DNA of 64,000 nucleotides from Heteronotia binoei (Eukaryota): assembly GCF_032191835.1 (NCBI RefSeq), contig NC_083228.1, forward strand, positions 78,306,001 through 78,370,000, written 5' to 3'. Of this stretch, positions 26,960 to 57,700 are shown piece by piece; the first letter of the stretch is position 1; each line of letters opens with the position of its first letter. A program made the position numbers and the translations under genes. The notes under the pieces are model-generated. The model did not search any database and was not told the DNA's origin. It saw only the letters and a list, made by a program, of their open reading frames with translations.

Positions 26960-29900
26960 GAGGTTTGTGCGGCTGCCTAAAATTCTGAGGATAGCTGGGG
27001 AACTGCTGTTTGTTTGGTCTTTGTTTGCTCTTTGTTTGGTTGAGTGGGCTAAAGGAGAAAGAGATTGAGAGTGATTGAGAGTGATTGCTGCTGATTGTTG
27101 AGGAGTGCCTCTGCTCCACCCTCTTTGCATTTTAAGCTGCGCCTTGCCAAATGTGTGGGAGCCAGTGGCTGTTTGCCTGGGGGCTCCCTAAGGACCAGGA
27201 ACCCAGATCCCTGATTTCCTTGTTCTCCCAATAAGGTAAGTTGACCCTCCAGAAGGGGAGCCACTTAAACAAACAACATTTAAAGAGGACTGTATATTTT
27301 ATATATATTGAAGATAGAATGCCAGCAGGGGGTTGGGGGCTTTCCAGTGTTTTGCACTGAGTGTCACATGTACGACTATCTGCCCAAAGGACAGAGGTCT
27401 TGGGTGTGTGCTCGATGCAAGGAGCTCCTGGTCCTCAGGGAACGAGTTCGTACCCTTGAGGCCGAGATGACTGCCCTGGAGAAGCAGAGACGGTCAGTTA
27501 GGCACTTGGGGAAGACTCTCGGGGGCGTATTAGATGAGCCCCGCTCTGAACGTAGCAGCCCCGTTGCTGCCAAAGAGCATGAGGGTCGAGAGGGAACAGG
27601 GCACCGGGCTGAGGATAAGGGGAATGCGCCCTCAGAAGGGACTCTTCTTCGGTTGGTGAGCGGGAATCCTTTCGCGCCAAGGAACCATCCCTGGGCAGGG
27701 GGAGAGGGGGGGGGGGTTGGTAGTTGGTGATTCGATCCTTAGGCAAGTAGACAGCTGGGTGGCAAAACCGTGTACTGACCGTATGGTGACTTGCCTGCCT
27801 GGTGCGAAGGTAGCAGACATTACGTGTGTAGTAGATAGGCTGATAGACCGTGCTGGGGAGGAGCCTGTGGTCGTGGTGCATGTTGGCACCAACGATGTGG
27901 GGAAATGCAGTCGTGAGGTCCTGGAGGAAAAATTTAGGCTGCTAGGCGGGAGACATAAGGCCAGGACCTCCAAGGTAGCCTTCTCAGAAGTGCTACCTGT
28001 TCCACGTGCAGGGCAGGAGAGACAGGCACAAATTAGAAGTCACAATGTGTGGATGAGACGATGGTGTAAGGAGGAAGGGTTTAAGTTTGTTAGGCACTGG
28101 GATGCTTTCTGGAACAAGCGGGAGCTGTACAAAAGAGACAGTCTTCACTTGTCCCCGGATGGAACCAGGCTGCTGGTGCTTAAAATCAAAAAGGTGGCAG
28201 AGCAGTTTTTAAACTAAATCTTGGGGGAAAGCCGACAGAAGATGAAATGTCTCTGGTTCGGGAGGACTCGTCTCAAAGAGATGAAGGGTTGGCTGCTATT
28301 TTTCTACCATGTAACGGACCAGAGTTGTCCACTGTGATGGTGACAAACAGTATGGACTGTCTGCCAGAGTCTCGAGGCGGCAGGAGGAAGGCGGCGGGAC
28401 TAGCTTGCCTGGGAAATTATAGATGTTTGTATACAAATGCTAGAAGTGTTCGAAGTAAAATTGGTGAATTGGAATGTTTAGTGTTGGGAGAAAACATAGA
28501 CATTGTGGGAATTTCAGAAACTTGGTGGAATGAGGAGAATCAGTGGGACACGGTGATTCCTGGATATGTTATATCGGAAGGATAGGGAGGGAAGGGTTGG
28601 AGGTGGGGTGGCTCTGTATGTCAGAGAGGATATACGGTCCAGTAAGACTGAGGTCAGAGAATTAGATTCCCTTTTAGAAATGCTTTGGGTTGAAATAGAG
28701 GGCCCAAAAGGAAATTTAACTATGGGAGTTTGTTATCGCCCACCAAATCAAAAGAGAGAGGACGATTATAATATGATGGAAGGCTTAAAGATAGCGGCTA
28801 AACGTAAAAACTGTGTCGTAATAGGTGATTTTAACTACCCGCAGAATGGGTCAATATGTGTTCTGGTCGAGAGAAAGAGATTGAGTTTCTTGATGCTCTC
28901 AATGACTATGCTATGGAGCAGATGGTCTCAGAACCTACCAGGGGTGGGGCGATCCTGGATTTGGTCCTAAGTAATCCCCAAGACTTGGTGAGAGATGTAA
29001 AAGTGATTGCGCCGCTTGGGAGCAGTGACCATAATGTTATTGATTTCACCGTTTGTATAAATAGGGAGTTGCCCAAAAAGACCGCCACAACCACGTTTAA
29101 CTTTAAAAGGGGTAAATACACTGAGATGAGGAGACATGTGAGGAGGAAACTGAAAGGAAAGGTAAATACGGTCAAAACCCTTGGGGAAGCTTGGAGACTA
29201 TTTAAAACTATAATCCTAGAAGCTCAGATAAAATACATACCACAAGTTAGGAAAGGCACAAACAGGCATAAGAAAAGGCCTGCATGGTTAACAAACAAAG
29301 TAATGGAAGCTGTAAAAGGTAAGAAGGACTCCTTTAAGCGGTGGAAAACCAGTCCAAGTGAGATTAGTAAAAGGGAACACAGGCTGTGGCAAATCAATTG
29401 CAAGACTGTGATCAGACAGGCAAAAAGGGACTATGAGGAGCATATTGCAAAAAACATAAAGACCAACAATAAAAATTTATTCAAATATATTAGAAGTAGG
29501 AAACCAGCCAGGGAGGCAGTGGGGCCCTTGGATGACCATGAGGTAAAAAGATTACTGAAGGAGGATAGGGAAATGGCTGAGAAGCTGAATGCACTTTTTG
29601 CCTCCGTCTTCACTGTGGAAGATGAGAACTTTTTGCCCGCCCCAGAACCACTAATTTTGGAAGGGGTGTTGAAAGACCTGAGTCAGATTGAGGTGACAAA
29701 AGAGGAGGTCCTACAAAACTAATAAGTCACCAGGTCTGGATGGCATACATCCGAGAGTTCTGAAAGAACTCAAAGTTGAACTTGTGGATCTTCTAACAAA
29801 AATCTGTAATCTTTCATTGAAATCTGCCTCCGTTCCTGAGGACTGGAAGGTAGCAAATGTCACCCGCATCTTTAAAAAGGGTTCCAGAGGAGATCCGGGA

Positions 29901-31297
29901 AATTACAGGCCAGTCAGTCTGACTTCAATACCGGGAAAGTTGGTAGAAACCATTATCAAGGACAGAATGAGTAGGCACATTGATGAACACGGGTTATTGT
30001 GGAAGACTCAGCATGGGTTCTGTAAGGGAAGATCTTGCCTCACTAACCTGTTACATTTCTTTGAGGGGGTGAACAAACATGTGGACAAAGGAGACCCGAT
30101 AGATGTTGTTTACCTTGACTTCCAGAAAGCTTTTGATAAAGTTCCTCATCAAAGGCTTCTTAGAAAGCTTGAGAGTCATGGAGTAAAAGGACAGGTCCTC
30201 TTGTGGATCAAAAACTGGCTGAGTAATAGGAAGCAGAGAGTGAGTATAAATGGGCAGTCTTCGCAGTGGAGGACGGTAAGCAGTGGGGTGCCGCAGGGCT
30301 CGGTACTGGGTCCCATGCTCTTTAACTTGTTCATAAATGATTTAGAGTTGGGAGTGAGCAGTGAAGTGGCCAAGTTTGCGGATGACACTAAATTGTTCAG
30401 GGTGGTGAGAACCAGAGAGGATTGTGAGGAACTCCAAAGGGATCTGTTGAGGCTGGGTGAGTGGGCATCAACGTGGCAGATGCAGTTCAATGTGGCCAAG
30501 TGCAAAGTAATGCACATTGGGGCCAAGAATCCCAGCTACAAATACAAGTTGATGGGGTGTGAACTGGCAGAGACTGACCAAGAGAGAGATCTCGGGGTCG
30601 TGGTAGATAACTCACTGAAAATGTCAAGACAGTGTGCGTTTGCAATAAAAAAGGCCAACGCCATGCTGGGAATTATTAGGAAGGGAATTGAAAACAAATC
30701 AGCCAGTATCATAATGCCCTGTAGAAATCGATGGTGCGGTCTCATTTGGAGTACTGTGTGCAGTTCTGGTCGCCGCACCTCAAAAAGGATATTATAGCAT
30801 TGGAGAAAGTCCAGAAAAGGGCAACTAGAATGATTAAAGGGCTGGAACACTTTCCCTATGAAGAAAGGTTGAAACGCTTGGGACTCTTTAGCTTGGAGAA
30901 ACGTCGACTGCGGGCTGACATGATAGAGGTTACAAGATAATGCATGGGACGGAGAAAGTAGAGAAAGAAGTACTTTTCTCCCTTTCTCACAATACAAGAA
31001 CTCGTGGGCATTCGATGAAATTGCTGAGCAGACAGGTTAAAATGGATAAAAGGAAGTACTTCTTCACCCAAAGGGTGATTAACATGTGGAATTCACTGCC
31101 ACAGGAGGTGGTGGTGGCCACAAGCATAGCCACCTTCAAGAGGGGTTTAGATAAAAATATGGAGCAGAGGTCCATCAGTGGCTATTAGCCACAGTGTGTG
31201 TGTGTGTGTGTGTGTGTATAAATTTTTTGCCACTGTGTGACACAGAGTGTTGGACTGGATGGGCCATTGGCCTGATCTAACATGGCTTCTCTTATGT
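26960..31297 (+). mobile_element. Near-full-length CR1 LINE (ORF1 zinc-finger/coiled-coil/SGNH esterase; ORF2 APE-RT), frameshifted
   Basis: ORF1 27308-28217 (CTEC...CARC, GDSILR, HVGTND, DSLHLS). ORF2 about 28360-31188 (YTNARS, GDFNYP, YRPVSLTS, YLDFQKAFD, KFADD, LGVVVD). Typical 3' end with (TG)n and ...gcttctcttatgt. 5' boundary approximate. Confidence 0.93.
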
Positions 31298-31500: not shown

Positions 31501-32244
31501 GATGTGAAGGTGCTATAAAAAGCACAGGTAGGAGGGCCAGGGCCTGTAGGAAGCCAGCTCCTGACCTATACCTCAGTACTCTAAAGAAGGAGTTGCCAAC
31601 CTTTTCTTTCATGAGAGCTGCTTCTGGACAATATTCCAAGCTACTCTCCTCCTCACCACCACCAACATGCTATCAAGCTTTGTTCTATCCTGGGAACATG
31701 AGATACACTTGAATCTATCAGCTGAAAAGCACAGAGAAAAATCCTATGAAGAGCTTTGCAGAAATATATGTTCTAGGCTTCTCTTTTTTTGTAATCTTCT
31801 AGGTTTTCTAGCAGATTATGAGGTACTCTATAGCAATGAGCTACCTGTTGGAGACCCCTATTATAAAGAGATTCCTCCAGATTCCCCATGTTCTGATTCA
31901 GGACTACTTGAGGCAGCCAATCATGTTAAGTATTGGTCATAAATTTTGAAATGTATGCATCTGGAAGATTATAGCAAAGTCTGAGTTTTTGTCTCACAAT
32001 ATAGCAGGATGGCTACATATTAGGGATTTTATGATAGAGGAAGAGTAAGTTCATTTTGTGTTTCTGAGGACATGGCTGAGTCCTTCCATCCCCATTTCCT
32101 CAGAAACTTATGTTACCTTCCTTGTCAAGAGGCCTTGCATTTCTACAAACCTCTCTCTGCTGCTTCATAACATATGTAGGTCTTCATATACTTTATTGTT
32201 GATTTCTGGAAAAGTGGGGGGAAATGCACAAAATTATCACATTT

Positions 32245-34905
32245 CTTTTTTCTCAATATTTTATTGAAATTTTATAAATACAAAAATAAACAACAGAATT
32301 ATTCAGCACATACAGTGGGTCTTATAAACTTAATAGTATTGCATATAAAGTCTAAAGATAGGTCAAAGCAATGTAAGGAGACTGGAATAGAGAATTTAAC
32401 AACTATTACTTAAGTTTTATCACAAACATAAGTTGTCAATTATTTTAGGAATCTCCTGCTGAGAGGTCAAATATTCTAAGAAGGGGGACCAGATAGGGGT
32501 AAAATCAGAGACTGAAGAATGCTTGTCAAAATGCATAAGATTATCCATGAGCTTAACGATGATATAGAAGTCTCACAACTTTTTATCCCAATATGAAAGA
32601 GTGAGTATTGTTGCAGTTTTCCAATTTGTGGCAATATTTTAGCAGCAGAAAGTAGAAGAGAGACCCATTCTATGGTAGAAGAACAACTCTTGAGACCCAT
32701 CCATTCAAAAACCCGTTTTCCAGTGTCAGTGAAATGTCCATGTGTGATGGATTTGATTTGAATCAATACAGATTCCCAGAAGGGAGCAATTTTGGGACAG
32801 TGTATCCAGCAGTGCAGATAGTCTCCTTTATTACCACATTTCTCCCAGCATAATGGATTACTAGTTGGATTTATGTAAGCCAATTTCCGGGGTGTGAGAT
32901 ACCAGTGTGAAATAATTTTAAAGGATTACAGTTTTACTTCAGTTATATTGGAATGGAAAGAAAGAACAGTTTGAGTCCCAAGATTCACAGTTCTTTTTTT
33001 CAGTATTAATATTTTATTAAGTGTGTATATATCAATTTATTTATACATCTAAAATAAATACATTTCGTTTTTTGCTTATTACCTTCTACAAATCGAACTG
33101 AATACTAACAACAAATAAATAAACCCCTTCTTCTTTATCTTATTTCCTTTCTTTACCCGATTTCACCCGATCCCCGTACCACTTTTCCCAGTTCTTATTC
33201 TAATCAAAATTATATTCTTTCTTTTGTTTCCAAAACTTCTTTACTTCTTCATGGACTTTCATCTTTTCACACTTAATTTTTAAAACTTTAACTATCTTCT
33301 CTCATGCCTACAAAAGAAAGCTGGACAGGGTTACCTCCAGAACTGGGTGCTGCAGAAAAATCTCTACAGTCGAAGGTCTAGGGGGGGACACATCCACCAC
33401 CTCCTTGCTACTCCATTGGCTTTAACAATTCATTTCCCATTTATCTTCTAACTATGTACATATTCTCCTATTAATTCGCCTCAAGAAAATATAATTCCCC
33501 AATTCAAACTCTTCCAGACTTTAGTTTAATTACACTGTCTATTAGTTCCTTGCCAGATGCCTCATTATATGCAGTAAAAGTTTGATTTTCCATATTGACC
33601 ACTAGATGGCCTAGTGGTAACCATCTATACAGAATTCCTTTGTTCCACAGAATCTTTGTTGTTTCTCTCAGTCTCCTTTTTGCATTAATTACTTCAGCTG
33701 AGATATCAGGAAATAAACCTATCCTGTCTTCAAGGCACAGTCCTTGTTTTTCCCTGGTGATTTAAAAAAAAATTGTTCTTCATCTGTAGTTGTTTAAATT
33801 CAACAACAATGTCTGGGGAAATGTCAGGAGCCTTTTTGGAAATGTTTAATCGGAAGGCAGAGGTGACAATCTCTTGGGAAAATTCTGCTTCTCCTTCTGT
33901 GAGAAGAATCTGACTCAGCCGTCTATTTAAAGCTATAGTAAGGTTTTCCGTCTCTCCAAAATTTACTGATATTCCACAAAGTTTGGCCTTTCTTTCTCTT
34001 AATTTTAACTCCTGGAGTATAATCTTATTTTTGGCCCAAGACTCAAAATCCTTGAAGTTTTTCAAATCCTCTGCTGTCTTTTTTGCCATTTGATATGAAG
34101 CTTTAGCTTTCTTATCTGTTGTTTTCAACGCTGCAGTGAGTTCATCCAATTTCTTATCGATTCGGCTGACTGTTTGAGAAGTCCTAGTTCCTTTTTTAAT
34201 TGTCCAACCTCTCCACTAAGAGACTTTATCTCACTCTTAATTTAATTCTTTATCTCTGTTAGGGCATGCAATATCTCAGTCTGTTCACTTTGGGGAGGGT
34301 TACTCCCTTCCGCTGTCAAATCCTCTAACAGAGAAGTCTCCAAGTCAGAATTTTCAGATTCTTCTAAGTCAGTTTTACCCTTTCTAGGAGGTCTGTAGGG
34401 AGGGTTTTTAGTACCTCTTTTTGCTCTAGTCCTTCCCATGCTTGACTTTGATGTTCTTTCCAAAATTGGCTGTGTTTTCTGGGAGTAGTCATTAATCTTA
34501 TGCAGAAATAGCAGGAGCTCAGGAGGGATGCAACCGGCCTGAAGCTCAGTCACCATGCCCCCCACAGTTCTTTTTTAATCCCAGTAAAGGGCTAGGATGT
34601 TAGTTTATTTAAAACATGTGCAGCCTGCCTTTCCATTCTACATAGGATCTTTTAGAGTGACCTCCCCCCACTCCTTCAAGTTTAAATCAGATGTTTACCT
34701 CCTCTGCCAACAATATGCTGGCCTTCATCTCAAAAATAATGCAGGAGGAAGAGGACCTGCTTTGATAATAAAGTTATTATCTCCTCCGAGTGCTGCCTTG
34801 GTAGAGGAGGGGTGTTCTAAAATCAAACAAATAAATAGATTCTGGATGAATCATTCCCAGGTTTCCTCAAAATGTCACCAAGAAGCTTCTGCTTTGCTCT
34901 TCTGT
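32245..34905 (-). mobile_element. Old 5'-truncated L1 (3' ORF2 end and tail), interrupted at 32986-34576 by the ORF1-only element
   Basis: CWEKCGNKGDYLHCWIHCPKIAPFW zinc-knuckle (ORF 32476-32883), T-rich tail at about 32245-32270; the degenerate sequence continues across the TSD into 34577-34905. Confidence 0.75.
33000..34562 (-). mobile_element. ORF1-only L1-derived element (HAL1-like), apparently full length
   Basis: 14-bp TSD cacagttctttttt at 32986-32999 and 34563-34576. ORF1p remnants 34439 to 33504 (frameshifted; C-terminal domain IGLFPDISAEVINAKRRLRETTKILWNKGILYRWLP). About 500-nt 3' UTR with AATAAA (33013-33018) and an A tail. No ORF2 sequence seen. Confidence 0.8.
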
Positions 34906-34906
34906 T

Positions 34907-36699
34907 AATTTATTATTTATCGTATGGCAGAATTACATACAGGAAGCATATAATAATATAAAATACATAACCAAGTTGATACAATGGACATGCAGCCTGA
35001 TTGGGCAAACCCCCTAAATCTAAATTTTCAGTCCACTCAGTCGCAACTGGGGAAAGTTTAAAGAGCTCCATCACATCACCCTGGAAATCATGACACTCAC
35101 ATACCTGTGACAGATGGAAAAGAGTTTGGCAGTATGCACCACAATTGCATTCACGTCCTGGTATTTTGTCTCATTTAAACGACAGGTCTGCACAACTACC
35201 AAAGCCTGTTCATCCTCTTTTAAGCATCTCCCATACTTTACATGGCAAGTCAAATCCTGCAGGCCTCTCACTGATGTTTATCAGGTTATGGATATTGAGT
35301 AGAACCAGGCCTTGGATTCAGTGGGAGCTCACAGGAACGCAACTCCTGAACCTTTCTGAGAGTTCCACCTCCTTTTCCATTGAATTGTAGGTGCAGCTCC
35401 ATAACAATCCCTGGATGAGCTCCACCACCTATTTTTCAACAAAACAACCCCTGGGTAGAACTGATTGCATCCATGTTCACAACCATTCATTCCCTATGTC
35501 GAAATGTTGGGATTGCAGGATTTGTGCAGATCTTATTGGTGGGTGTTGGGACTTTAATCTGGATAGGCCCATGTCAATCATGTCTTTGTGGATGGGCAAC
35601 TCTCTGTTTTCAATTATTTTTCTATATTTATGAAGAGCATCTTGTCTTCGAAGATGTGAAGGAGTGATGTGGCACAGTATGGGTAGCCAATAGGTCAGAG
35701 TAGGATTAATACAGCCACTGATGGCTCTCATTGTTGTGTTGAATCAGACATCAAGCTTGTGGACATGGGGGCTCTTGAGCCACACTGAAGCACCATATTC
35801 TGCAGTGCTAACCCCAAAGCTGAGCATCTAAGTGTTGCAGCAGATGTACCCCAAGTTGTACCACATAATTTTTGGATAATATTGTTTTGCATGTGTATTT
35901 TTGCTGCTACGATGTTACGTACCAACCCCAAAGCTAAGCGTCTAAGTATTGTAGCAGACACACCTGAAGCTGAACCACATAATTTTTGGAAAATGTTATT
36001 TTGCATGTATATTTTTGCTACTACATTGCTAAGATGGTGTTTATAGTTCAAGGTCCTGTCCAGGGTAATGCCAAGGTACTTAGGTTTATGGTTGTGTGTA
36101 ACCTGAGTGTCATTAATGTAAACACTCAGTTCCCAGTTGGCAAGATTGTTATCGAGATGGAAACAGGGCAAGGGGGATTATTACACTTGGGATAAGCTGC
36201 TATTTCAAAAATTTAGCTCCCTAGTAAGTATTTCCTCGCCCTTTCAATTGATTTGAGCCTTACTGCAATCGCCATGTCATTGGCACAAGCAAACTTCCTG
36301 GGTATCATCTTGGGAACATCAGAAATGAATAGACTGAAAAGAACTGGAGTGAGGGTTGAGCTGTGGGGTAGACCATTATTCAGTTTCTTCTGCTTGCTGA
36401 TTGAGTGACCCATAATTAATTGGAAAGTTCTATTATTCTGCATATTAATTAAGAAACAAAATACTGTTCTGCTGGGAAAAAACTTGTAAAAACTTGTACA
36501 GTAGACCATCCCTCCAGACTGTGTCATAAACATCAGTCACATCAATGAGAACCGCTAATATCTTAAGACATTTTTGATACCCTGCCTCAATGAAAGTTGT
36601 TAAGCCTGGTCTTCACAACTACAATGGGGTCTAAATCCTGCTTGCTCTATAGAGATATGTTCATTAATTTTGTCACTGATTCTGTTCAGGATTAGTCTC
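34907..36699 (-). mobile_element. Vingi/Ingi-clade LINE, 3' part (RT and C-terminus)
   Basis: EQAGFRP, KPKYLGITLDRTL, KLCGTTWGTSAATLRCSAL and frameshifted STAEYGASVW motifs; 3' tail gccatacgataaataata. Confidence 0.8.
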
Positions 36700-39600
36700 C
36701 AGTTTTCAAAAGTTGTATTGATTTCAGAAAGATTGAGGGTAGGGAATAGAGGGAGTAGAAAACAATACATTTTGACCTTGTTCTGCATAAAATATTTTCA
36801 AAAAGTACAAGCTTAGTTCTACAATACTTCCTTTACATGAATTGTTCCATATTATTATGTCTAAACTAAACATCATCCACATTTCAAATTTTATAGCATA
36901 AATCTATTGTTACAATTATCTATTAGTTTTGACAATTCTAGTAAAGGCAATTTTGTAATATAAAATACAGGGGGGCGGAAAGGGAGAAATAAGTTCACAC
37001 CAGAGAATCTTAAGAGTCTTGAATGTCTAACCAGGAATAGAATTTCATCCAATATTTTCTTGTTTCTTCTTTAGATTTCCCAGCCAACAGCTGGGATAGA
37101 AAGTCCAGCTCTGCTGTTTCCAAAATTTTTCCCACCAAGTCCATTCTCGTGGAAATTTCCTGAGATTTCCATCTCTGCACCAGAAGAATCCTAGCTGCTG
37201 CGTTAAAGTGTGCCAACAAATGTCTCATTTCTTTGGAATAGTCCTCAGGAAATATGTTCAATAAAAATAGTTCTGGTTTGAAATGAATCTGTGTCTTCAT
37301 AATCTTCTGTAATATTTCATGCACCATTTTCCAATAACCCTTCACCATCTCACATGTCCACCACATATGGTAAAAAGAACCAACCTGTTTAGTGCATTTC
37401 TAACATTTGTTAGACAATTAGTATAAATCTTACACAATTTCTGTGGAGTCAGGTACCATCTATAAAACATCTTCTACAAATTTTCTTTACAAATTGCTGA
37501 CCTAGTTAATTTAATGTTAAGCTTTCACAATCTCTCCCATTCTTCTAAGGTAATATTATGACCAAAATTTTTTACCCATTGGACCATACAATCTTTTACA
37601 ACTTCGTCTTGTGTCTTCATTTGAAGTAAATATGCATATAATTTTAATAATAATAATTATTATTATTTGTACCCCGCACTCCCCACCGAGGCAGGCTCAG
37701 GGCGGCTCACAGACACGAAGATTAGTTTTTACTGTGGACCCAAAAGGATTTTATCAAATACATATTGATCTGTATTGAAACATGTCACCTTGTCTTTGGC
37801 ATATCTGAATTCAACTTTTATTCTTAACCACCAGTTCATTTTAACATCCATATTTTCCACCTCTTCTCTGGTTTTCAATTGATTATTTTTTCCCAATGGA
37901 TCTACATACCTATAATTCTGATTTAATTTTAGGAGATTTGGATGAGTAAATGCTTCTACTGGAGAAACCCATCTTGGAATTTTTTTTATAAATTCTAGTC
38001 TTTAGCCATGACCACGTATGGTATAAGGATTTTCAAAACCAGTGATTCTTAAAATAGGAATGGCCTTCAAGTCTTTGATACCATAAATATGCATGCCACC
38101 CCATAGTGAGATCATGTCCTTCCAACAACAATTGTCTCTTGTCATTCAGCAGTATCCAGTCTCTTACCCATAGAAGTGCAGAGGCTTTATAATACAATTG
38201 CCAATACAATTGCCAGTCTGGAAGACCCATACCTGCTCTTAATTTAGAGTCTTGTAATGTCTTTAATTTAATTCTAAGTTTTTTGCCTTGCCAGACATAT
38301 TTAGAAACCATCTTGTTCAGTTCTTGGAAGAATCCACAATTTAAAAATATTGGAATTGTTTGAAACAGAAATAGTAACCTTGGAAGGATATTCATCTTTA
38401 TTAAGGCTATTCTTCCCATTAAGAATAGATTTAAGTTGTGCCATTTTTCCAAATCTTTTTTAATTTCTTTAAGCAGTTTGTCATAATTATCTGTTTTCAA
38501 GTTACTACACTTATTTGAAATAACACCTAGATATTTGATTCTTTTTTCATACAAAACCCTGATCTTTGCTGGAAGGATTGAATTTGTTCCATCGTCATAT
38601 TCTTTGTCAGAAATTTTGTTTTATGATAGTTAATCTTTAATCCTGCCCAGTGACCAAATTGTTTAATCTTATTTATAAGACAATCTATTGAGTCCATTGG
38701 TTGTTCTAGTATAAAGACAAGGTCATCTGCGAAAACTATAAGTTTGTATTGTTCATCTTTTATCACAGCTCCCTTTATACTTGTATCTTCCCTTATTTGA
38801 TTATTCAATACCTCTAGAGATAAAATAAAAAGTAGAGGTGACAATGGACAGCCTTGTATTGTACCTTTTTTAATGTTAATCACATCTGTTAGTTCGCCGT
38901 TCACTGTCACCCTTGCATTTTGTAAAGAATATATTGCTTCCACTGCTCTCAATAAGTTTTCACCACATTCCATGCCTTTCAGTTGCTGCAGCATAAAATA
39001 CCAACAAATATTATCGAAGGCCTTCTCAGCATCTAAACAGATTAAAGCCGTTTGTTTCTCTGGATGAGTCTCATAATATTCCAAGATATTACAAACTGTT
39101 CTAACATTATCTTTCAAATATCTTCTAAGAAGAAATCCTGCTTGATCATAATGTATTATAGACTGTAGAACTTTCTTCAAACATTGTGCCAGTATTGTAG
39201 CAAAAATGTTATAGTCCACATTTAAGAGGGAAATTGGACGATAGTTTTTAATATCTTTCAAATCATTATTTTCTTTTGGAATCAAAGATATTGTAGCTTC
39301 TTGCCATGAAACTGGTATTTGGCCTTCCTCTTGAATCTTTTCAATAAGAAGTTTAAATAGCAAGAGTAAAGACTCTTCATAAGCTTTGTAGAATTCTGCA
39401 GGTAATTCATCTGGACCCGGAGTTTTACCATTCTTTTGAAGTGCTGTTGCATCTCCAAGTTCCCTTATTATTATTGGCTCATTTAAATTTTTTGTTGTTT
39501 TGTAAATTTATTGAGATTATTTTGGTTGATATATTCTTCTAAATCTATTTTATGAACTTGCTTATCTTCATATAATTTTTTATAGAACTGTTCCACAATT

Positions 39601-42600
39601 TGACATATTTTTTGCTTTTGAGTTTTCTCTTTGATGTTCTCATCTTTCAATGTCCTGATTATTCTTTTGGCCTTTTCTTTTCTCATCCTATAAGCCAATC
39701 ACCTTTCAGGATTATTGGCATGTTCAAAAAATTTTTGTCTACCATACCTCAATTTAATCTCCATCTCTTTCATCAGAATTAAATTCAGTTTATGATGCAT
39801 TTCTTTCACTTTTTTTGAAATTAATGCTTTGTTGGCTATTTTTTAAGGTTCTTTTCAGCTTCTCCAGCTTGTGATATTAAATTTTGAAAATTTTCAGTTC
39901 TTTTTCTCTTTTTCTTGATACTATATCTAATTGCAAGGCCCCTATAATAAGCTTTAGTGGTGGTCCAAACTACTTGCATCTTTACCTCTGGTGTTACGTT
40001 CTGTTTAAAAAAAGATTCCATTTCCACCTTAGATTCTTTGAGAAAGTCTTTATCTTTCAAAATTGAAATATTTAGCCCCCATGATCTTCTCATCCGTGGA
40101 CCTTTGAGCTTTATCATTACAGGGCTATGGTCTGAAATAACTCTTGTTTGAATTTCTGTGTCAACTAAGTCTTTAATCATACTTGCAGAAAGCTAACACA
40201 TATCGATTCTTGACCAAGTTTGATGGCTACAGGAATAGTAAGTAAAATCTTTGGAGTTGGGATATCTTGTTCTCCATACATCAACCAGATCTACTTCTTC
40301 TGCTAATTTCCAAAAACTTGTTGGCAACTGAAGACCTTTACTTTTCATCTGTTTGTGCATTTTTTTGTCCAGTTGTCTGTCAGAAACTGCATTGAAATCT
40401 CCTATTAGACAATATTCTACATATTCCAAATTTGATAATTTAAGGCGCAAATCTTGAAAAAATTTCTCTTGATGGTCATTTGGGGCATAGATATTTGCCA
40501 ATAAAATTTTCTTATTATCCACTGTAATTTCCACTAATAGAGTTATTCCATCTTCAGAAGCATACTGCAATTGTGGGTTAAATTTATCTTTACTATATAT
40601 TGCCACTCTCCTTTTCTTCTTATTCATGTCTGTTGCTGTAAATAAATTACCAAGTTTTTTATTTTTTAAAAAATGTTGATCTTTAGTTAAAATATGAGTT
40701 TCTTATAGGCAAATTATGTCCATTTCCATTTTTGTCCAATATCTAAAAGTCTTTCTCTTTTTTGGCAGGAGAGTTAAGTCCATTCACATGAATTGAAACT
40801 ATTGAAGCCATTATGGGTTTTGTTTATCATTATCTTTTTAAATCTTTTTTGAAATGCTGTCTTGTATGATATCTCTGTGGTTCATTTGGATTTTCTTCAC
40901 CAGAACTTTCTTCCTCCTCCTCCTCCTTTTCCTTGCCTTCTTTTTCCTTCACTCTATCCAGAAAATTCTGAGCTTTAAAAGTGGAGTTAATCCTGTATCT
41001 GTTCTCCTGGTAGGTAAAAAGCAGGCCTTCTGGCATTAGCCACATATAGGGTATTTCTATTCCTCTCAAAAAATCTGTTAGCGCTTGGTATTCTATCCTT
41101 TTTTGCCTCACTGGCCACGGTACTTCTCTTAGGATTTTCACCATATTGCCAACCATCATCATTCTGTCTCTTACTTGCTTCAAGATGTCATCTTTAGTCC
41201 TCTTTCTTGTGAATCTCAAATGAACTTCACTAGGTAATTTGTTTCATCTTGTATAACTTGATGGCACCATTCTAACTTGATCAAACTCTTCTTCCATCCT
41301 CTGCGAAGTCACCTGTAAAATTTCAGCCAAGGCTTCAATTAAAATTTTCTGTAAATCTTCATCTTTCTCTTCTGGTATATTTTGAAACCTCAACATATAG
41401 GCGACTCTGTCTACTTCCAATTGCAAGAGTTTAGAATCATGTATATTCTGTTCTTTTTCCAGATGTTCCACCTTTTGGATATTCTCTGTCACCTGACCAT
41501 CTAGTACTTTTAAGTCTTTGTTAGTCTCAGTTGTCTGTCTGCTATTCTCCAGAAGCTCTTGTTTAATCTCTGCCATCTGTTCATCAGTGTTGTCTACTTT
41601 ACTAGCCAGCTGTGTTATAGCCGTCATTAAGGTGTTTTTCATTTCTTTCATATCTCCTTGCATGGTCATAAATTTCCCTGGCCCAGGTAGAGCACTGGGC
41701 GAAGGAAATGGTGGCTTTCCTTCTCTGTTATCTTTTTTTTACTGTTTCTTTGAAGCCAATCCCAGCTTTATTTTCCATTCTTATTAGAGTAAGCACACTC
41801 ACAACCACAAGTTCAATAAGTGCCTCTTCAACGTTTGTTTTGGAACTCTATGTTCCTGTCTATAACAGATAAACTAATCTCCACCAAGCAATACCCTTAT
41901 TGTGAAGTAGTTTAAAAAAACAACTTTTTAACTTCTATCAACAATTTGTGGAAGCCAAAACAATGTAAAGAATAATAGTAAACAAAAATTTTTAGTCAAC
42001 CACACTAGATAGTCAATAGGCAAAACAATTCAGTTCGTTACAACAACTTCACTATTACAAGTCTTCTAGCAATGCTGATTCAGCTGCAATCCAATTACAA
42101 TGACGTCTTTCAAATAACTTCAAACTTCAGAAACTTCAAAATGTAAAATTGTAATCCAGGGCTGAATGCCCTATTTATAATCCAAGGGTGAAATCCAAGA
42201 TTGAAAAATAAACCAATAATCCAAACAGAAAAAAAGAAAATCAGGCACTCCCAAAAATAAAGGTAAAAATTAGTAGAAAATAGGAAAAAGTTCCCCTATT
42301 TAATGATACAACAAAACATGAAAAATAAAAGGGGCATAAGAAAAAAGGAATCCCAAATCAAAAAATATTTAAACCATGTCAAAAAATATTCCAACCACTA
42401 ATAAAAAGAAGGCAGAGAAAAAAGAAAAACAAGTTTAAAAGGTTATATCCATATCATCCAACAAAAATAGATAAAAAACCAATTTGGAAATTTATAAAGT
42501 TATTCTTCTTATAGCCAGAGATCCTTCTATACCTTATAAGTCACCACCAGCCTTTGGAAGTTAATTAAAACTCTTATAAGTTCATTCAGAGCACTTCAAT

Positions 42601-44379: not shown

Positions 44380-44734
44380 TGTTCCTGCACCGGTGGCACC
44401 GGTGACATCATAGCGAATGAAGGTCACGTTGCCCTTCGCGTGAGCTCCGGGCCCGAAGAAGGGGTCAAACACTCACTCCTCGACGCACGCGCAAAACCTT
44501 GGAGAGCGCACGTGCAGATTCTGGACCTGGCATTGTGAGCATGCGCATTATGCGAAGCTTACTACACGCCCGGAGACGTTTAGGAGCCGTGGACGCCTGC
44601 GTAGTGAAATCGTGTGAAGGCTGTGCTTCCGACGCATGCGCTTTGTGCGGCAAAGCTGCTTCTGTCCTCTTAGCGCGGTGAGAGAGAGAGAGATAGAGTC
44701 TTCTGCACCTCTTCTGACCCGATTTGTTTCCGGC
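44380..44734 (+). promoter_or_regulatory. PGAM1 CpG-island promoter
   Basis: CpG-dense. NRF1-like GCATGCGCA at about 44539-44547 and CGCATGCGC at 44633-44641. ACTACACGCCCGG (ZNF143-like) at 44561-44573. Confidence 0.7.
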
Positions 44735-48910
<4,176 letters not shown>

Positions 48911-51143: not shown

Positions 51144-52510
51144 ATTTTATTTATATCCCGCCCTCCCTGCCGAAGCAGGCTCAGGGCGGCTAACAACATC
51201 AAATACCGTAGAGTATACAATAAATATTTAAAAATAGTAGCTAATTTTAAACAGTCTAATTTAAAATTTCTAAAATTAACATTCTGGTGCTATTTCAGCA
51301 TGACGGTAAAAATCGCTTGGGCGAGTCCCTCTGTCATTTTAATCGGTGAAGGCCATCCCAAAAAGGATGGTCTTGCAGGCCCTGCGAAACTGTTCAAAGT
51401 CCCACAGGGCCCGCACTTCTTCCGGGAGCTGGTTCCATAGGTGCGGAGCTACGATAGAGAAGGCCCGCATGCGAGTGCTCTGCAGTTTTGCCTCCTTCGG
51501 CCTGGGGATCATCAGTTGGTTCTTCCCTGCTGACCTCAGTGCTCTCTGGGGTTCATATGGGGAAAGACAGTCCCTCAGGTAGGCAGGTCCTTGGCCATAT
51601 AGGGCTTTAAAGGTAATAACCAGCACTTTGTAACGAATCCGGTATGTAACTGGCAACCAGTGCAGTCCGCGCAGCCCTGGCTGTATGTGCTCCCACTTCG
51701 GGAGCCCCAATAACAGCCTAGCCGCCGCGTTCTGCACCAACAGCAGCTTCCGGATTCGGCACAGAGGCAGCCCAATGTAGAGGGCATTACAGTAATCTAA
51801 TCTCAAGGTGACCGTTGCATGAATCACTGTTGCTAGGTCCCGATGCTCTAGGAAGGGGGCCAACTGCCTTGCCCGCCTTAGATGAAAGAAGGCTGACTTG
51901 GCGGTGGCTGCTATCTGGGCCTCCATTTAGAGTGAAGGCTCCAGTAGAACTCCCAAGCTCCTGACCCGGTATTTCCCTCCCCAAAGCGCCACGACCTATG
52001 CAAAGGACCTCTGTCTTCGTTGGATTCAACCCACTCAGCCTTAGCCAAGTTGCCACGGCCTGCAGTGCCAGGTCCAAATTCCCTGGGACGCAGTCAGGCC
52101 AGCCAGCCATTAGTAGATAGAGCTGGGTGTCATCTGCATATTGATGACACCAAGCCCGTGCCATCTGGGCAAGGGGGCGCATATTAAATAGCATCGGGGA
52201 GAGAACTGCTCCCTGAGGCACTCCACAATCTAGTGTGCGCCTCTGGGACAGCTCACCCCCAATTGCCACCCTTTGTCCCCGACCCTCAAGGAAGGAGAAG
52301 AGCCATTGTAAAGCCGACCCCCTAACCCCTACGTCGGTGAGGCGGCGGGTCAGTAGCTGATGGTTGACTGTGTTGAACGCAGCCAACAGATCTAACAACA
52401 TCAGCACCGCCACGCCACCTCGATCCAGATGCCGCTGGAGGTCATCTGCCAAGGTGACCAGTACTGTCTCCGTCCCGTGACCTGGACGAAAGCCGGCCTG
52501 GCAAGGGTCA
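51144..52510 (-). mobile_element. 5'-truncated L2 LINE (RT C-terminal half and 3' UTR)
   Basis: GVPQGAVLSPMLFN, QYADDTQLY, LDYCNALYIGLP, LHWLPVTYRIRYKVL, APHLWNQLP motifs; L2 tail. Confidence 0.9.
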
Positions 52511-52959
52511 TTTCTTTTGATTTTTCCTTCATATATTCCTTTGATTGTGGATTTTGAACTTAGGCTTCCCAGACAGTAGGCTGGTACTACCCACTAGTTG
52601 GCTTGTCTCTGTTTCTGCACTGCCTCATAACAGTTGCAGTTATTTTTCTAGAGAAGACTACAGTTTTGTAAATAAACACAAAGCCCTCAGTCTGTGCCAT
52701 GGTGCCTTCACATGTTCTTGACCAGCACATGAAACAGCTTATGTACAAAAGCACACGATGCCCCAGCCATCTCATCTCATATTTTCCTCTGGGTCATAGG
52801 ATCAAATCATTGACCATGAGATTTCTGCAATGAATGTCAAAAAATCAAAAGTAGGTTTGCAACTCACAGATGCACACCTGAACAGCATATTCAGGATTGC
52901 TACAGCTGACAGTGTCTCCAGTTTCCGATGCAATAATTCAGAGCCAGAGGTGTCAGTTA

Positions 52960-53155
52960 TCAGAAACTGTTGAAATATCGCAAGCATGCTAATGTTTTAA
53001 GCATGTCTTATTTTAAGTAAAAAATATTTGTTTGTCTGTACCCTTTATAAAGCTTATATCTGTTCTACCTGGCATTACATTTTATGACACATGGCCCAGC
53101 CCAATAACGTCTCATTTATGTCAAATCTGGCCCTCATAATCAGTTCGACACCTCG
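52960..53155 (+). mobile_element. hAT (Charlie-like) MITE right arm
   Basis: ...catttatgtcaaatctggccctcataatcagttcgacacctcg, followed by atccagaa. Confidence 0.7.
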
Positions 53156-53160
53156 ATCCA

Positions 53161-54070
53161 GAATGATGAATAATGTAGTGGCTAAGTTTGCAGATGACAC
53201 AAAATTATTCAGGATGCTGAAAACTAAGGTTGACAGTAAAGAGCTCCAAGAGAATCTCCATAAATTGGGTAAGTGGGCAGCAATGTGGCAAATGAAGTCC
53301 AGTGTTGGTAAATATAGGAACAAAAAAAATCTCAACTTCAAGTATAGGCTAATGGGATCTGAACTTGCTGTGACTGAGAGGAAAGGAGATTGTGGGGTTG
53401 TTGTGGATAGCTCAATGAAAGTGTAAACCCAGTGTGCTGCAGCAGTGAAAAGAGCAAGCTCTTTGCTGGGAATTATTAAAAAATAAAACAGCCAATATTA
53501 TATTACCCCTATATAGATCTATGGTGTGGCCTCATTTGGAACACCGTGTGCAGTTCTGGTCACCATATCTATCTCAAAAAGACATGATGGAAAGTGCCAT
53601 AAAGTCACAGCCATTTGCCATCCTCTCAAAAGGGACATTGAGCTGGAAAAAGTATAAATGAGGTTACCCAAGATGATTAGGGGGTTGGAGCACCTTCCCT
53701 GTGAGTACAGGCTGAAAAGTCCAGAACTTTTTGGTTTAGAAAAGAGAAGACTACAGAGGGAGATGATAGTTTTATATAAAATTATTCACAAGGTAGAGAG
53801 AATTGACAAAGAACTCTTTCTCCACCTCCCAAAATATGAGGTCTATATATAGGTCTATTGCTGGCTGCCACCCCTGGGGATTAAAGAGAACCTCCATGTT
53901 CAAAGGCAGTCAGCCTCTGAATCCCAGTGCCAGGAGACAACATCAGGTGAAGGCCCTGGCATCTATGCCTTGTTATTGGATTGCCAGAGGAACTGTTTGG
54001 CCGCTTAGTGAGAGAGGATGCTAAACTAGATGGGACTACTGGTCTGATCCAGTAGGGCTCTTATGTGACT
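53161..54070 (+). mobile_element. 5'-truncated CR1 fragment
   Basis: VAKFADDTKLFR, GVVVDSSMK, MIRGLEHLP, GLEKRRL; CR1 3' end ctactggtctgatccagtagggctcttatgt. Confidence 0.88.
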
Positions 54071-54759: not shown

Positions 54760-57700
54760 TTAGGTCTGCAGAAATTGTGGCTGCACCCGGGCTACCTTGC
54801 GCAGTTCCTTGGCATGTGTACTGGGACACTGCATTTCACACCAACTGATCGGCACCATCTGTACTCCTGAGAGCAAAATAAAAGTAATTAACAATCTAGG
54901 TTATGTTTTTGATATTCCTGCAGAAGCAGGAGTCCTCTACCAATGAAAATAACCTATGACCAATTCCTGCCACAGCTCAAGCTACCTTGAGGGAAATTTA
55001 ACTGCTCTGCTTCTGCAAAGCTCTCAAAACTCTGCACCTGCCTCATTATCATAATTATTCTATTCAAATATTATTCTATTCCTACCAATGCTACATTACT
55101 ACGGCTGGCAGTGCTTTCTATATAGCCATGGGTTTAAAAAGTTGTGGCCTAGAAGACTTTTTGCAATACATTTCAATCTGTGCAGAATGAAACTGTTCTT
55201 ACCTGCTTCACTATGAGCCACCACTACCCCCAGCTCATTTTCAGCTGTTGTCAGCAAGTAGTTGGATTGTGCATCTCCCAATGAGATCTAGTCCCACAAG
55301 CTAGGTTAAAGAAAACTGATTAATGGCTTTCACTCTAACTAGAAGTTAACAGATTCCTAAACTGGGCATAAAAACGACAACAAAAAAAGGATACAACTTT
55401 GGCCAGAACGATGTCTCCTGGGCGGAAACTCTTGTAAACCTCTACCTGCCAGTGTGGGGGAAAGAAAGACAGAAGATAAACAAAGTTGTAAGACTAGTAC
55501 AAGACTCTTATGTCACAGAGAAAATTCATGGAAGCAAGCCTACACTATGCATGAAAAAAAAATCAAAGAAATTAATGGGATCTGTGCTAAGATACTCTCA
55601 ACAGTGGAACAGCTGAATAGCACCTTATTCCACATGGGTTGAGTTTTCATTAAGAAATTTTCCAAACTTCAAAAATAATTTGGGGGAGAGGGTAAGTTAG
55701 GTGATAGATATTCTAATAAATTAATAAAATGTGTAATAGTGTCAGAAAGAAATGCTCTTGGCTCCATTTGCATTAGTGTGCTCATCATATGCTGTAATTG
55801 AGATGCTTATTCCACTGACCTTGTCTTTCTCTGTAGCTCGGATATCTTCTCTCCTGTAAAGGGAGACATTGAGACCTTACCCTTGCCATCCCCTTTTCTG
55901 CCTGCTGTCTATAAGTGAATTGTAATGTGATTAGCTTGCTTTAAAAAGAAGGGTTAGCTAACTTAATAGGTAACTGCTCTGGAGTAAATAAACCAGTGAC
56001 CCCCAACTAGGTGTGTACGTATTGGCAACATGCCTATGTGTTTCTAGGCGCCTGCTTCTTCCCCAGAACAAAGTGCCAATCCTGACTTTCCTCCAATTTA
56101 GTGGACAGGAAATGTGGCAGAACAGCCCAGAAGGCATCACTTTTGCATGTTTTCAGCATAGTAGGATGCTTGGGTTGGAACCTCTGAGCATTTTGTCATT
56201 GGCACCAGCCTTCAAGGTAGCCATTTTGTGTTCGCACCTCTATTTTTCAAAACATCAAAAGTGCCTACAGGTTCAGCAATATTAGGGGCTTCTAAAGTAA
56301 ACAATGAACTGCTGACAGGTACGGAAAGTAAAAAATCACTGATTCCTTAGTGTTCATCAGCACTCAAGTGCAAATGATGAGAATAAAACATGGTATTTAT
56401 AAAGGATAGAAGCCTAATCTCGCCTTGCCAAAAATCTCTTCCTACCGTATTGTTCCACGGAAGGGGGATTTCAGTGGTGTAGAGCTGACATACAAGATGT
56501 GGACCTTTGCAAAACGTGAATTAATGCTGCAGACCTGGGAAGAAGATTGAGAAAGAAAAAGGCCATTCACGTTTACTTTCAGGTTAAGCAAATCCAAACT
56601 AGTCAATTCAGGACATGACACACTCTGTAGAAGGAAGATGTGCCACATCTTCTGCTTAGCATCTTTCTCATTTTTCCTGTTCCCCCTCCCCTTCTGCTGA
56701 GGACAGATGCTTGCCAGGACTCACTGAGTCCATTGGAGAAAAAAATTCAAGGGCTTATAGAAAGCCTGTATATGAATAAACCACAGCAAAGGAGACAACA
56801 CTGCCCATACACAACAATCAAGTTTGCAGCACTCAATATCTTCTAGTTCGTTCACTTCCTGGCACATTAATAACCAAATTAAGGATGTTTCTATCTAATC
56901 TAGCAAGATCTGCCAATATTACCTTGCATGTCACCGTGGCCCCCACATCAGGTAGAAGTTGAGAATCTGCATCCCTCATTACAGAGACTACTGGCAGCTG
57001 CAAAAAAGCAAAGAAAACTGGTCTATCATCCACTGGTCGCATTGCATCAGGCTGTCTGCTGGCACAATAAGCCAACTTTGTCTCTGATCTCTTCTGGATT
57101 TCCAAAAGATCACACACTGATTCTTGTCCCACTCGTGCATCAAAACATACAGCATATCCAAGTGAACTTTGCTTCATTTTTACCATGCCATTTTCACTTT
57201 TCTTAATGAAACAACCAGCTAGAGAGGCAAATATAGAGCCATGACGGGTGTAGGTGCCACTGCCGGGGGTTCCTTCTTCTAAGCTGCAGAGTCTCTCTCC
57301 TGGGGAATACAATATAAAGGTGAAGTCAGTGCTGGAACTCCAAGTTTGTCTGCTTGTGATAGACTGTATGCCCAGGCTCTTCCAGATAGTATCTAACAAA
57401 ACATAATGTGTTGGTGGAATCAAAAGCAGCATTGTGAAATCCGGCCTATATAGTGATCACCACTGGGTTTGCATAACTTCATAAACTATTTTAAGGCCAC
57501 AGTAAATGAAACAGGTAAAGTTGGTGCCATAGTGGAAGCAGGATCAGCCTAGGTGTCCCAAATTTGCCAAGGTTTCTATTGTATTATTCTGCATGTTCAG
57601 ATACATCAGGGAAAAATATCTGTAAAGTGCTATTTTTTACCTCTTCCCCCAAAAACCTTTGCAATGGAAGAGGGAAGGCTTCCTGTTACTAGGAAAATAC

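What the first reader, a model, noticed from the sequence alone, without database searches (positions are those of the whole stretch)
32986..34576. Complete ORF1-only (half-L1/HAL1-like) retrotransposon with TSD, in a squamate
Seen in sequence: a 1.56-kb minus-strand insert bounded by a 14-bp TSD (cacagttctttttt at 32986-32999 and 34563-34576). On the element strand the target reads gatt/aaaaaagaactgtg, the canonical L1 endonuclease TT/AAAA site. The element starts GGGGCATGG and has an approximately 120-nt 5' UTR. It carries a single L1-type ORF1 (34439-33504, about 310 codons with a few frameshifts; basic N-terminus, coiled coil, RRM/CTD-like end FPDISAEV...LWNKGILYRWLP). About 500 nt of purine-rich non-coding 3' UTR follow, with AATAAA 12 nt before the A tail. 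I see no endonuclease or RT remnant. Established: ORF1-only HAL1 elements, mobilised in trans by L1 ORF2p, were described from placental and marsupial mammals. Inference: this may be an independently evolved reptilian non-autonomous family that supplies its own RNA chaperone and parasitises L1. Its ORF1p looks quite different from that of the neighbouring full-length L1.
Basis: partly seen in the sequence, partly recalled or inferred. Interest (0 to 1): 0.75.

Follow-up and report, generated by a model that had tools for sequence, protein, structure and literature searches.

The report
Dead ORF1-only L1-type retrocopy in gecko
This 1.56-kb insertion is a decayed copy of a short jumping element that has only the RNA-binding gene of an L1-like retrotransposon and no copying enzyme, so an L1 must have moved it; mammals have the same design (HAL1), and I could not test here whether this copy belongs to a self-propagating reptile family.

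Summary
A 1,563-nt minus-strand unit (34562->33000) lies between two exact 14-nt repeats at a TTTT/AA-type nick site. It has a 123-nt leader, one 312-codon reading frame and a 504-nt non-coding tail. AATAAA sits 12 nt before a 1-7 nt A run. The frame is broken by one TAA and two frameshifts. There is no endonuclease or RT remnant.

The protein has a basic N-terminus, a long confidently predicted helix and an alpha-beta-beta-beta-alpha end. Language-model neighbours carry the L1 ORF1 RRM and CTD families. Pfam, PDB and fold searches give nothing significant. They also give nothing for the ORF1p of the bona fide L1 7 kb away, so that blank is uninformative.

Whether this is a HAL1-like family or a by-product of a full-length L1 could not be tested.

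The scan has reported the same design on other DNA of this genome. One follow-up (s1-340664) claims about 200 copies of a 1.6-kb unit. That is a lead I could not check.

New here: the 14-mer occurs a third time (13/14) at the 3' end of the adjacent 5'-truncated L1. Two insertions therefore used one target.

The parts
34563..34576 (-). 5' copy of the target-site duplication (T1). On the element strand it reads A6 then GAACTGTG, preceded by GATT.
   Evidence: Exact 14/14 repeat.
34440..34562 (-). Leader of 123 nt beginning with five G. The first ATG (34556-34554) is in frame with ORF1 and has no stop before it.
33504..34439 (-). Decayed ORF1, 312 codons. It has a basic N-terminus, an acidic/Ser-rich stretch, a long helix (coiled coil), an RRM-like middle and an alpha-beta-beta-beta-alpha C-terminal domain.
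   Evidence: Translations. Stop-codon deficit P about 2e-9. AlphaFold helix at pLDDT 78-90. CTD topology. ESM neighbours PF17490 and PF02994.
34242..34244 (-). In-frame TAA, codon 66 counted from ATG 34439.
34158..34170 (-). Approximate site of the first frameshift, between ...KQSAE and IDKKLDEL...
   Evidence: P0002 aligns from just after it.
33764..33772 (-). T9 run holding the second frameshift, inside the RRM-like part.
33000..33503 (-). Non-coding 3' region of 504 nt, purine-rich and C-poor. It has AATAAA at 33041-33036 and 33018-33013 and ends in a single A before the TSD's A run.
   Evidence: composition, stops, signal positions; no ORF2 similarity.
32986..32999 (-). 3' copy of the target-site duplication (T2). 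It is at the same time the 5' flank of the adjacent truncated L1.
32252..32985 (-). Adjacent 5'-truncated L1 fragment. It holds an ORF2 C-terminal Cys/His piece (32925->32479), a 3' UTR of about 227 nt and AATAAA at 32264-32259.
   Evidence: The L1 assignment of the Cys/His motif is from my knowledge; Pfam gave nothing.
32238..32251 (-). Third copy of the 14-mer (T3, 13/14), directly after the truncated L1's 3' end.

Best explanation
This is a dead copy of an ORF1-only, L1-type non-autonomous retroposon, the 'half-L1' design.

Inferred mechanism:
1. An RNA of about 1.56 kb carried a short leader, one ORF1 gene and a 0.5-kb non-coding tail with its own AATAAA.
2. The RNA was polyadenylated. A co-resident L1 supplied ORF2p (endonuclease and RT) in trans.
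3. ORF2p nicked the bottom strand at TTTTTT/AATC. Reverse transcription was primed on the T run, and the whole RNA was copied, including a G-rich 5' end.
4. The result is a 14-nt target-site duplication.

Its own ORF1p (basic N-terminus, coiled coil, RRM-like and CTD-like domains) would have coated the RNA as in L1. Since insertion the copy has acquired one stop codon and two frameshifts.

I consider it more likely than not that it belongs to a multi-copy family that spreads as ORF1-only units in this gecko-type genome. That last step rests on unverified notes of this scan, not on a test made here.

Shown: the anatomy, the absence of ORF2, the target site and TSD, and the recent coding state. 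Inferred: trans-mobilisation by L1 ORF2p, the RNA-chaperone role of the ORF1p, and family membership.
For: - Exact 14-nt TSD at a TTTT/AA-type site, with AATAAA 12 nt before the A run.
- One 312-codon frame with 1 stop where about 23 are expected.
- The 504-nt tail has 11-17 stops per frame and no similarity to EN, RT or the C-terminal pieces of the window's L1. It is therefore not a recently truncated ORF2.
- A long helix with pLDDT 78-90 and alpha-beta-beta-beta-alpha topology for the last 65 residues.
- ESM neighbours: 24 of 30 hits for the C piece carry PF17490 (L1 ORF1 dsRBD-like CTD), and PF02994 stands at rank 5 for the middle piece.
- Weak matches colinear with known L1 ORF1p CTDs: the neighbouring L1's CTD core (p = 0.013), mouse ORF1p CTD 2jrb (64 of 65 residues aligned, Foldseek E = 1), and human ORF1p 2ykq residues 249-323 (Z 2.7, 18% identity).
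- One true relative, P0002 (38% identity over 81 residues, E 4.7e-4), from an unrelated Logan contig. This shows the gene type exists elsewhere.
- No annotated host orthologue among 1.84 billion representatives.
- Leads only: s1-340664 reports about 200 copies of a 1.6-kb ORF1-only unit in this genome, and three further first-reader notes describe units of 1.62-1.72 kb.
Against: - No second copy was seen by me: the window has none and no outside copy could be fetched.
- Identity with the family of s1-340664 is untested.
- No significant match to any L1 ORF1p by Pfam, PDB sequence, Foldseek or VIA-align.
- The structure models are of low to moderate confidence (pLDDT 63 and 57).
- The A tail is at most 7 nt.
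- A 123-nt leader is short for an internal promoter.
- Two other follow-ups in this genome judged similar-looking ORF1-only copies to be one-off products (s1-345459, s1-322590).
Confidence: 0.5

Rival explanations
1. By-product of a full-length L1, not a lineage of its own. The RNA was an ordinary L1 transcript that was polyadenylated early, at an AATAAA in a long ORF1-ORF2 spacer, or that lost ORF2 by splicing or internal deletion. Another L1's ORF2p then copied it in trans. Such copies can recur many times without ever serving as sources themselves.
For: - This rival predicts the same anatomy as the best explanation.
- A first-reader note in this genome (s1-340797) reports an intact L1 whose spacer holds an AATAAA that would give exactly this RNA.
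- Two follow-ups judged other ORF1-only copies one-off.
- No family evidence was obtained here.
Against: - The 504 nt after ORF1 show no ORF2 coding remnant. The parent would therefore need a spacer of 0.5 kb or more.
- The one full-length L1 in the window has a spacer of about 130 nt and an unrelated ORF1.
- Several notes describe units of nearly the same length (1.6-1.7 kb), and one reports about 200 copies (unverified).
Confidence: 0.33
2. The gene is not L1-derived. The unit is an ORF1/gag-only derivative of another LINE clade, or a coiled-coil protein gene of unknown origin that L1 retro-copied.
For: - No significant match to Pfam Transposase_22, Tnp_22_dsRBD or Tnp_22_trimer, or to solved L1 ORF1p.
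- The best ESM hit for the C piece is Baculo_FP_2nd, not an L1 family. The recognition value (2076) is below the tool's 2300 mark.
Against: - The control fails in the same way. The ORF1p of the neighbouring element, which has EN and RT in L1 order, also gets no Pfam or PDB hit.
- Both pieces independently point to the L1 ORF1 families among named ESM neighbours.
- There is no zinc knuckle, esterase or PHD domain as in other clades' ORF1. The window's CR1-like element, by contrast, shows a GDSL esterase.
- The target site and AATAAA fit L1-type mobilisation.
Confidence: 0.08
3. Processed pseudogene of a host gene, for example a domesticated ORF1-derived gene like mammalian L1TD1: a cellular mRNA copied once by L1.
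For: The anatomy (leader, ORF, 3' UTR with AATAAA, A run, TSD) is exactly that of a processed pseudogene.
Against: A full HMMER scan of 1.84 billion representative proteins, which include annotated vertebrate genomes, found no orthologue. It found one 145-aa fragment at 38% identity. A conserved squamate gene should have given strong hits.
Confidence: 0.05

Closest known systems
Mammalian HAL1 (half-L1) non-autonomous retrotransposons (Smit 1999; Bao and Jurka 2010, as described in PMC5753468 and PMC5322556)
   Same: It encodes only ORF1p. It has its own 3' end with a poly(A) signal and is flanked by TSDs. It depends on the RT/EN of full-length L1. HAL1 is said to have arisen independently several times.
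   Different: - The host is a squamate, not a mammal.
- The ORF1p has no detectable sequence similarity to mammalian sequences, so it is not a descendant of those families.
- Copy number, transcription and selection on ORF1 are documented for HAL1 and untested here.
- The A tail is nearly absent.
Prematurely polyadenylated, spliced or internally deleted L1 retrocopies
   Same: Front half of an L1 (leader plus ORF1) retro-copied in trans with a TSD.
   Different: Those are sporadic products of a full-length parent. Here no parent is known, and the 0.5 kb after ORF1 is non-coding rather than the start of ORF2.
HeT-A of Drosophila telomeres (gag-only non-LTR element; my knowledge; ORF1-only telomeric elements are discussed in PMC13534243, found)
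   Same: A non-LTR element that keeps only the first (Gag/ORF1) gene and relies on an RT supplied in trans.
   Different: It belongs to a different LINE clade (Jockey) with a different ORF1 type. It is targeted to telomeres and is not flanked by TSDs.
L1TD1, a host gene derived from L1 ORF1 (PMC4161310)
   Same: An ORF1-derived coding sequence that exists without ORF2.
   Different: L1TD1 is a single-copy, conserved host gene. This unit is a TSD-flanked retrocopy with a broken frame and no orthologues.

Membership tests
HAL1-type (ORF1-only, L1-dependent) retroposon | Encodes ORF1 only; no endonuclease or reverse transcriptase | tested here: met
   There is one 312-codon frame. The remaining 504 nt have 11-17 stops per frame and no tblastn similarity to the window's L1 ORF2 pieces.
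HAL1-type (ORF1-only, L1-dependent) retroposon | The ORF1 is of L1 type (coiled coil, RRM, CTD) | tested here: inconclusive
   Positive signs: a long helix is predicted with confidence, the CTD-like topology is alpha-beta-beta-beta-alpha, and ESM neighbours carry PF17490 and PF02994. Negative signs: no Pfam, PDB, Foldseek or VIA match of significance. The neighbouring bona fide L1 ORF1p fails the same searches.
HAL1-type (ORF1-only, L1-dependent) retroposon | Inserted by L1 machinery: TSD, TTTT/AA-type nick site, poly(A) signal and A tail | tested here: met
   14/14 TSD, target GATT|AAAAAAGAACTGTG, and AATAAA 12 nt before the A run. The A tail is only 1-7 nt long.
HAL1-type (ORF1-only, L1-dependent) retroposon | Multi-copy family whose members share the same ORF1-to-3'-end structure, each with its own TSD | not testable with these tools
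   There is no copy in the window. Searches of protein and metagenome collections were empty. Scan notes claim such a family, but I did not verify this.
HAL1-type (ORF1-only, L1-dependent) retroposon | ORF1 kept under purifying selection; element transcribed from its own promoter | not testable with these tools
   This needs other copies and RNA data. The present copy was coding until recently but is now broken.
Mammalian HAL1 families of Repbase (descent) | Sequence similarity to HAL1, HAL1b, HAL1M8 or mammalian L1 ORF1 | tested here: not met
   phmmer against 1.84 billion representatives and against PDB (human and mouse ORF1p) gave no mammalian match. Repbase and Dfam themselves were not available.
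Processed pseudogene of a host gene | A parent gene with orthologues in related species | tested here: not met
   The only relative is a 145-aa fragment at 38% identity from one Logan contig.

The most novel reading that the evidence does not exclude
Geckos carry a self-propagating ORF1-only parasite of L1 that arose independently of mammalian HAL1. Its ORF1p has diverged beyond recognition from the ORF1p of co-resident autonomous L1s. This would imply that keeping a private RNA-binding protein helps a non-autonomous element capture foreign ORF2p.
Probability: 0.4. Interest if true: 0.55.

Novelty: new member of a known kind. Interest (0 to 1): 0.35.

Why it matters
In the papers I could read, HAL1 elements are described only from mammals. 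They are the one class of L1 parasite that brings its own ORF1p. A reptilian counterpart would show that the design arises repeatedly wherever L1 is active. It would also give a second, independent system for asking why ORF1p is kept and how ORF2p is captured in trans. This single broken copy adds one dated insertion and one example of target-site re-use. The biological weight lies with the family, which this scan has already reported from other DNA of the same genome and which still needs a genome-wide check.

Tried and rejected
Family scans and sequence searches:
- Pfam on the four stop-free ORF1 pieces found no L1 family.
- PDB sequence search with the middle and C pieces gave only chance hits.
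- Word-based protein search with the middle piece, the C piece and the neighbour's ORF1 C piece found nothing. The last was meant to build an L1 ORF1 profile.
- The full HMMER scan with the middle piece returned one true relative (P0002) and two repeat-protein artefacts.

Attempts to reach other copies:
- The look-up of sequencing runs: none was listed, so read laying could not be used.
- Metagenome scans by protein and by a 30-mer were empty.
- Scan-note look-up by sequence was blank.

Structure:
- AlphaFold of the C piece gave pLDDT 63. Foldseek, VIA wide and VIA re-rank gave no significant match. L1 ORF1p CTDs appear only at E = 1 (2jrb) and Z 2.7 (2ykq).
- AlphaFold of the middle piece with P0002 was confident only for the helix.

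Other checks:
- Rfam and the tandem-repeat scan of the unit found nothing.
- The bacterial promoter/terminator scan is irrelevant for this genome.
- I tested whether the unit's 3' UTR is homologous to that of the adjacent truncated L1. It is not significantly so (p about 0.18).
- I rejected the idea that the unit plus the adjacent L1 fragment is one internally deleted L1, because the junction holds an exact copy of the target 14-mer.
- Literature: no open paper joins HAL1 with squamates. Bao and Jurka 2010 is not held.

A join with X was used only inside one script.

Full report
**What is there.** On the minus strand a 1,563-nt unit runs from 34562 to 33000. It lies between two identical 14-nt repeats, 34576-34563 and 32999-32986. 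On the element strand the target reads GATT|AAAAAAGAACTGTG. The bottom strand is therefore TTTTTT/AATC, the kind of site L1 endonuclease prefers (established knowledge). A 14-nt exact repeat somewhere in such a 2-kb AT-rich region arises in 3.9% of Markov simulations. Here one copy directly follows the A run after AATAAA and the other directly precedes the first base of the unit. The pair is therefore a target-site duplication.

**Anatomy.**
- The unit begins with five G.
- A 123-nt leader precedes the ATG at 34439. The very first ATG (34556) is in the same frame with no stop between, so the protein could be 39 residues longer.
- The reading frame ends at TGA 33506-33504 and has 312 codons.
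- It is broken by a TAA (34242-34244), a frameshift near 34158-34170 and a frameshift in a T9 run (33764-33772).
- From its base composition about 23 stops would be expected, and one is present (P about 2e-9). The gene was intact at or shortly before insertion.
- The last 504 nt are purine-rich (61.5%) and C-poor (9%), and closed in all frames (11-17 stops each).
- AATAAA lies 12 nt before the end.
- Only one A lies between the unit and the six A of the TSD.

**No ORF2.** I ran tblastn with the endonuclease, RT and C-terminal pieces of the full-length L1 in this window, and with the C-terminal piece of the adjacent L1 fragment. It finds only scattered chance matches in the unit (best E about 0.1). 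Because ORF1 has only three lesions, a recently truncated ORF2 would still show long open stretches. The tail is therefore natively non-coding.

**The protein.** The order of parts is:
- a basic N-terminus;
- an acidic, Ser-rich stretch;
- a long helix, which AlphaFold predicts at pLDDT 78-90 over about 60 residues of the middle piece;
- a middle part that aligns with the one relative found;
- a C-terminal 65 residues predicted as helix, three strands, helix (pLDDT about 70-76).

This is the topology of the dsRBD-like CTD of L1 ORF1p (my knowledge; the Pfam name of PF17490 says the same).

Language-model neighbours support this as a lead. For the C piece, 24 of 30 nearest clusters carry PF17490. 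For the middle piece, PF02994 (L1 ORF1 RRM) appears at rank 5.

Formal tests are not significant:
- Pfam: none.
- PDB by sequence: none.
- Foldseek: mouse ORF1p CTD 2jrb at rank 23, E = 1, 64 of 65 residues aligned.
- VIA-align: human ORF1p 2ykq residues 249-323, Z 2.7, rmsd 4.5 over 65 residues, 18% identity.
- The wide VIA search gave nothing.

A control matters here. The element at about 41800-36900 has EN (Exo_endo_phos) and RT (RVT_1) downstream of its ORF1. Its ORF1p also gets no Pfam or PDB hit. These libraries are therefore blind to squamate L1 ORF1p, and the blank does not count against an L1 origin.

The two ORF1 proteins of the window are not alike by BLASTP. Smith-Waterman finds only a weak match in the CTD core, colinear in the two proteins (z 3.1, p 0.013).

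**Relatives.** A full HMMER scan of 1.84 billion representative proteins with the 145-residue middle piece returned one true relative. P0002 is a 145-residue fragment from a single 2.8-kb Logan contig. It is 38% identical over residues 5-85 and also aligns around the SAF motif further on. There is no annotated vertebrate orthologue. This argues against a retrocopy of a conserved host gene.

**Family or one-off.** This is the crux, and I could not test it. The window holds no second copy. Word-based protein searches and metagenome scans were empty.

Notes of this scan on other DNA of the same genome describe the same design. One follow-up (s1-340664) reports about 200 copies of a 1.6-kb ORF1-only unit. 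Three more first-reader notes give units of 1.62-1.72 kb. Two follow-ups judged other ORF1-only copies one-off, and one note (s1-340797) points to an AATAAA in the spacer of an intact L1 that would yield just such an RNA. These are leads only. I could not compare sequences, so I do not know whether this copy belongs to that family.

My estimates are:
- 0.5 for membership in a HAL1-like family;
- 0.33 for a by-product of a full-length L1;
- 0.08 for an ORF1 that is not L1-derived;
- 0.05 for a host-gene retrocopy.

**A new detail.** The 14-mer occurs a third time, 13/14, at 32251-32238. It directly follows the 3' end of a 5'-truncated L1 fragment (32985-32252), whose AATAAA lies at 32264-32259. 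That fragment begins right after the second 14-mer. The layout on the minus strand is therefore T1, ORF1-only unit, T2, truncated L1, T3. Two L1-type insertions used the same 14-nt target.

The simplest order is as follows. The truncated L1 inserted first at GATT|A6GAACTGTG. Its 5' TSD copy recreated the same nick site, and the ORF1-only unit then inserted there with the same second-strand cut. This fits T1 = T2 being exact while T3 differs at one base. The reverse order is not excluded.

The 3' UTRs of the two elements are not significantly similar (p about 0.18). The internal exact copy of the target sequence rules out a single internally deleted L1.

**Comparison with the known.** HAL1 is described as an L1 derivative that encodes only ORF1p, has a poly(A) tail and TSDs, depends on L1 RT/EN, and arose several times in mammals (PMC5753468, PMC5322556; the primary paper, Bao and Jurka 2010, is not held). 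This unit works like a HAL1 in every feature that one copy can show. It is not a descendant of the mammalian families (no similarity). I found no open paper that links HAL1 with squamates. Repbase and Dfam could not be queried.

**Verdict.** This is an ordinary-looking dead retrocopy of a known design in a new host group, already noted elsewhere in this genome by the scan. Interest is moderate to low for this copy. It would be higher for the family if a genome-wide analysis confirms it.

Noticed in passing
window 32238-32251, 32252-32985, 32986-32999: A 5'-truncated L1 fragment (ORF2 C-terminal Cys/His piece, 3' UTR, AATAAA) is flanked by the same 14-mer as the ORF1-only unit. The downstream copy is 13/14. 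One target site was therefore used by two successive L1-type insertions with the same TSD boundaries.
   Followed up: partly
window 34554-34556: The first ATG of the unit, at its seventh base, is in frame with ORF1 and open for 39 codons. The real leader may therefore be only 6 nt.
   Followed up: no
window about 36900-41800 (minus strand): Near full-length L1: ORF1 41738->40833 (one break), EN from 40702 (Exo_endo_phos), RT 39507->38530 (RVT_1), Cys/His C-terminal piece 37399->37013. The ORF1-ORF2 spacer is about 130 nt. Its ORF1p gets no Pfam or PDB hit.
   Followed up: partly
window 27284-31185 (plus strand): CR1-like LINE whose ORF1 has a Cys-rich N-terminus and a GDSL esterase domain (Lipase_GDSL_2, E 3.7e-10), followed by ORF2 with RVT_1 (E 1e-36). 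Related RT fragments lie at 51342-52593 (minus strand) and 53088-53564.
   Followed up: no
window 35731-36797 (minus strand): Decayed RT fragment of another LINE, with an internal tandem duplication of about 101 nt (35810-35910 and 35924-36024, 84% identical).
   Followed up: no
window 44618-45028 and 47028-47336 (plus strand); 56836-57432 (minus strand): Host exons. Two pieces match a phosphoglycerate-mutase-like gene (His_Phos_1, E 1e-11 and 1e-10). One piece has an exosome RRP4/CSL4-type N-terminal domain (ECR1_N, E 4e-10). This resembles the PGAM1-EXOSC1 neighbourhood of other vertebrates (my knowledge).
   Followed up: no
P0002 (Logan contig, 2,762 nt, not fetched): This is the only relative of the ORF1p in 1.84 billion representatives. 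Its first 105 or so residues align with the unit's coiled-coil and RRM-like part, then it diverges, as a frameshifted copy in another species would.
   Followed up: partly
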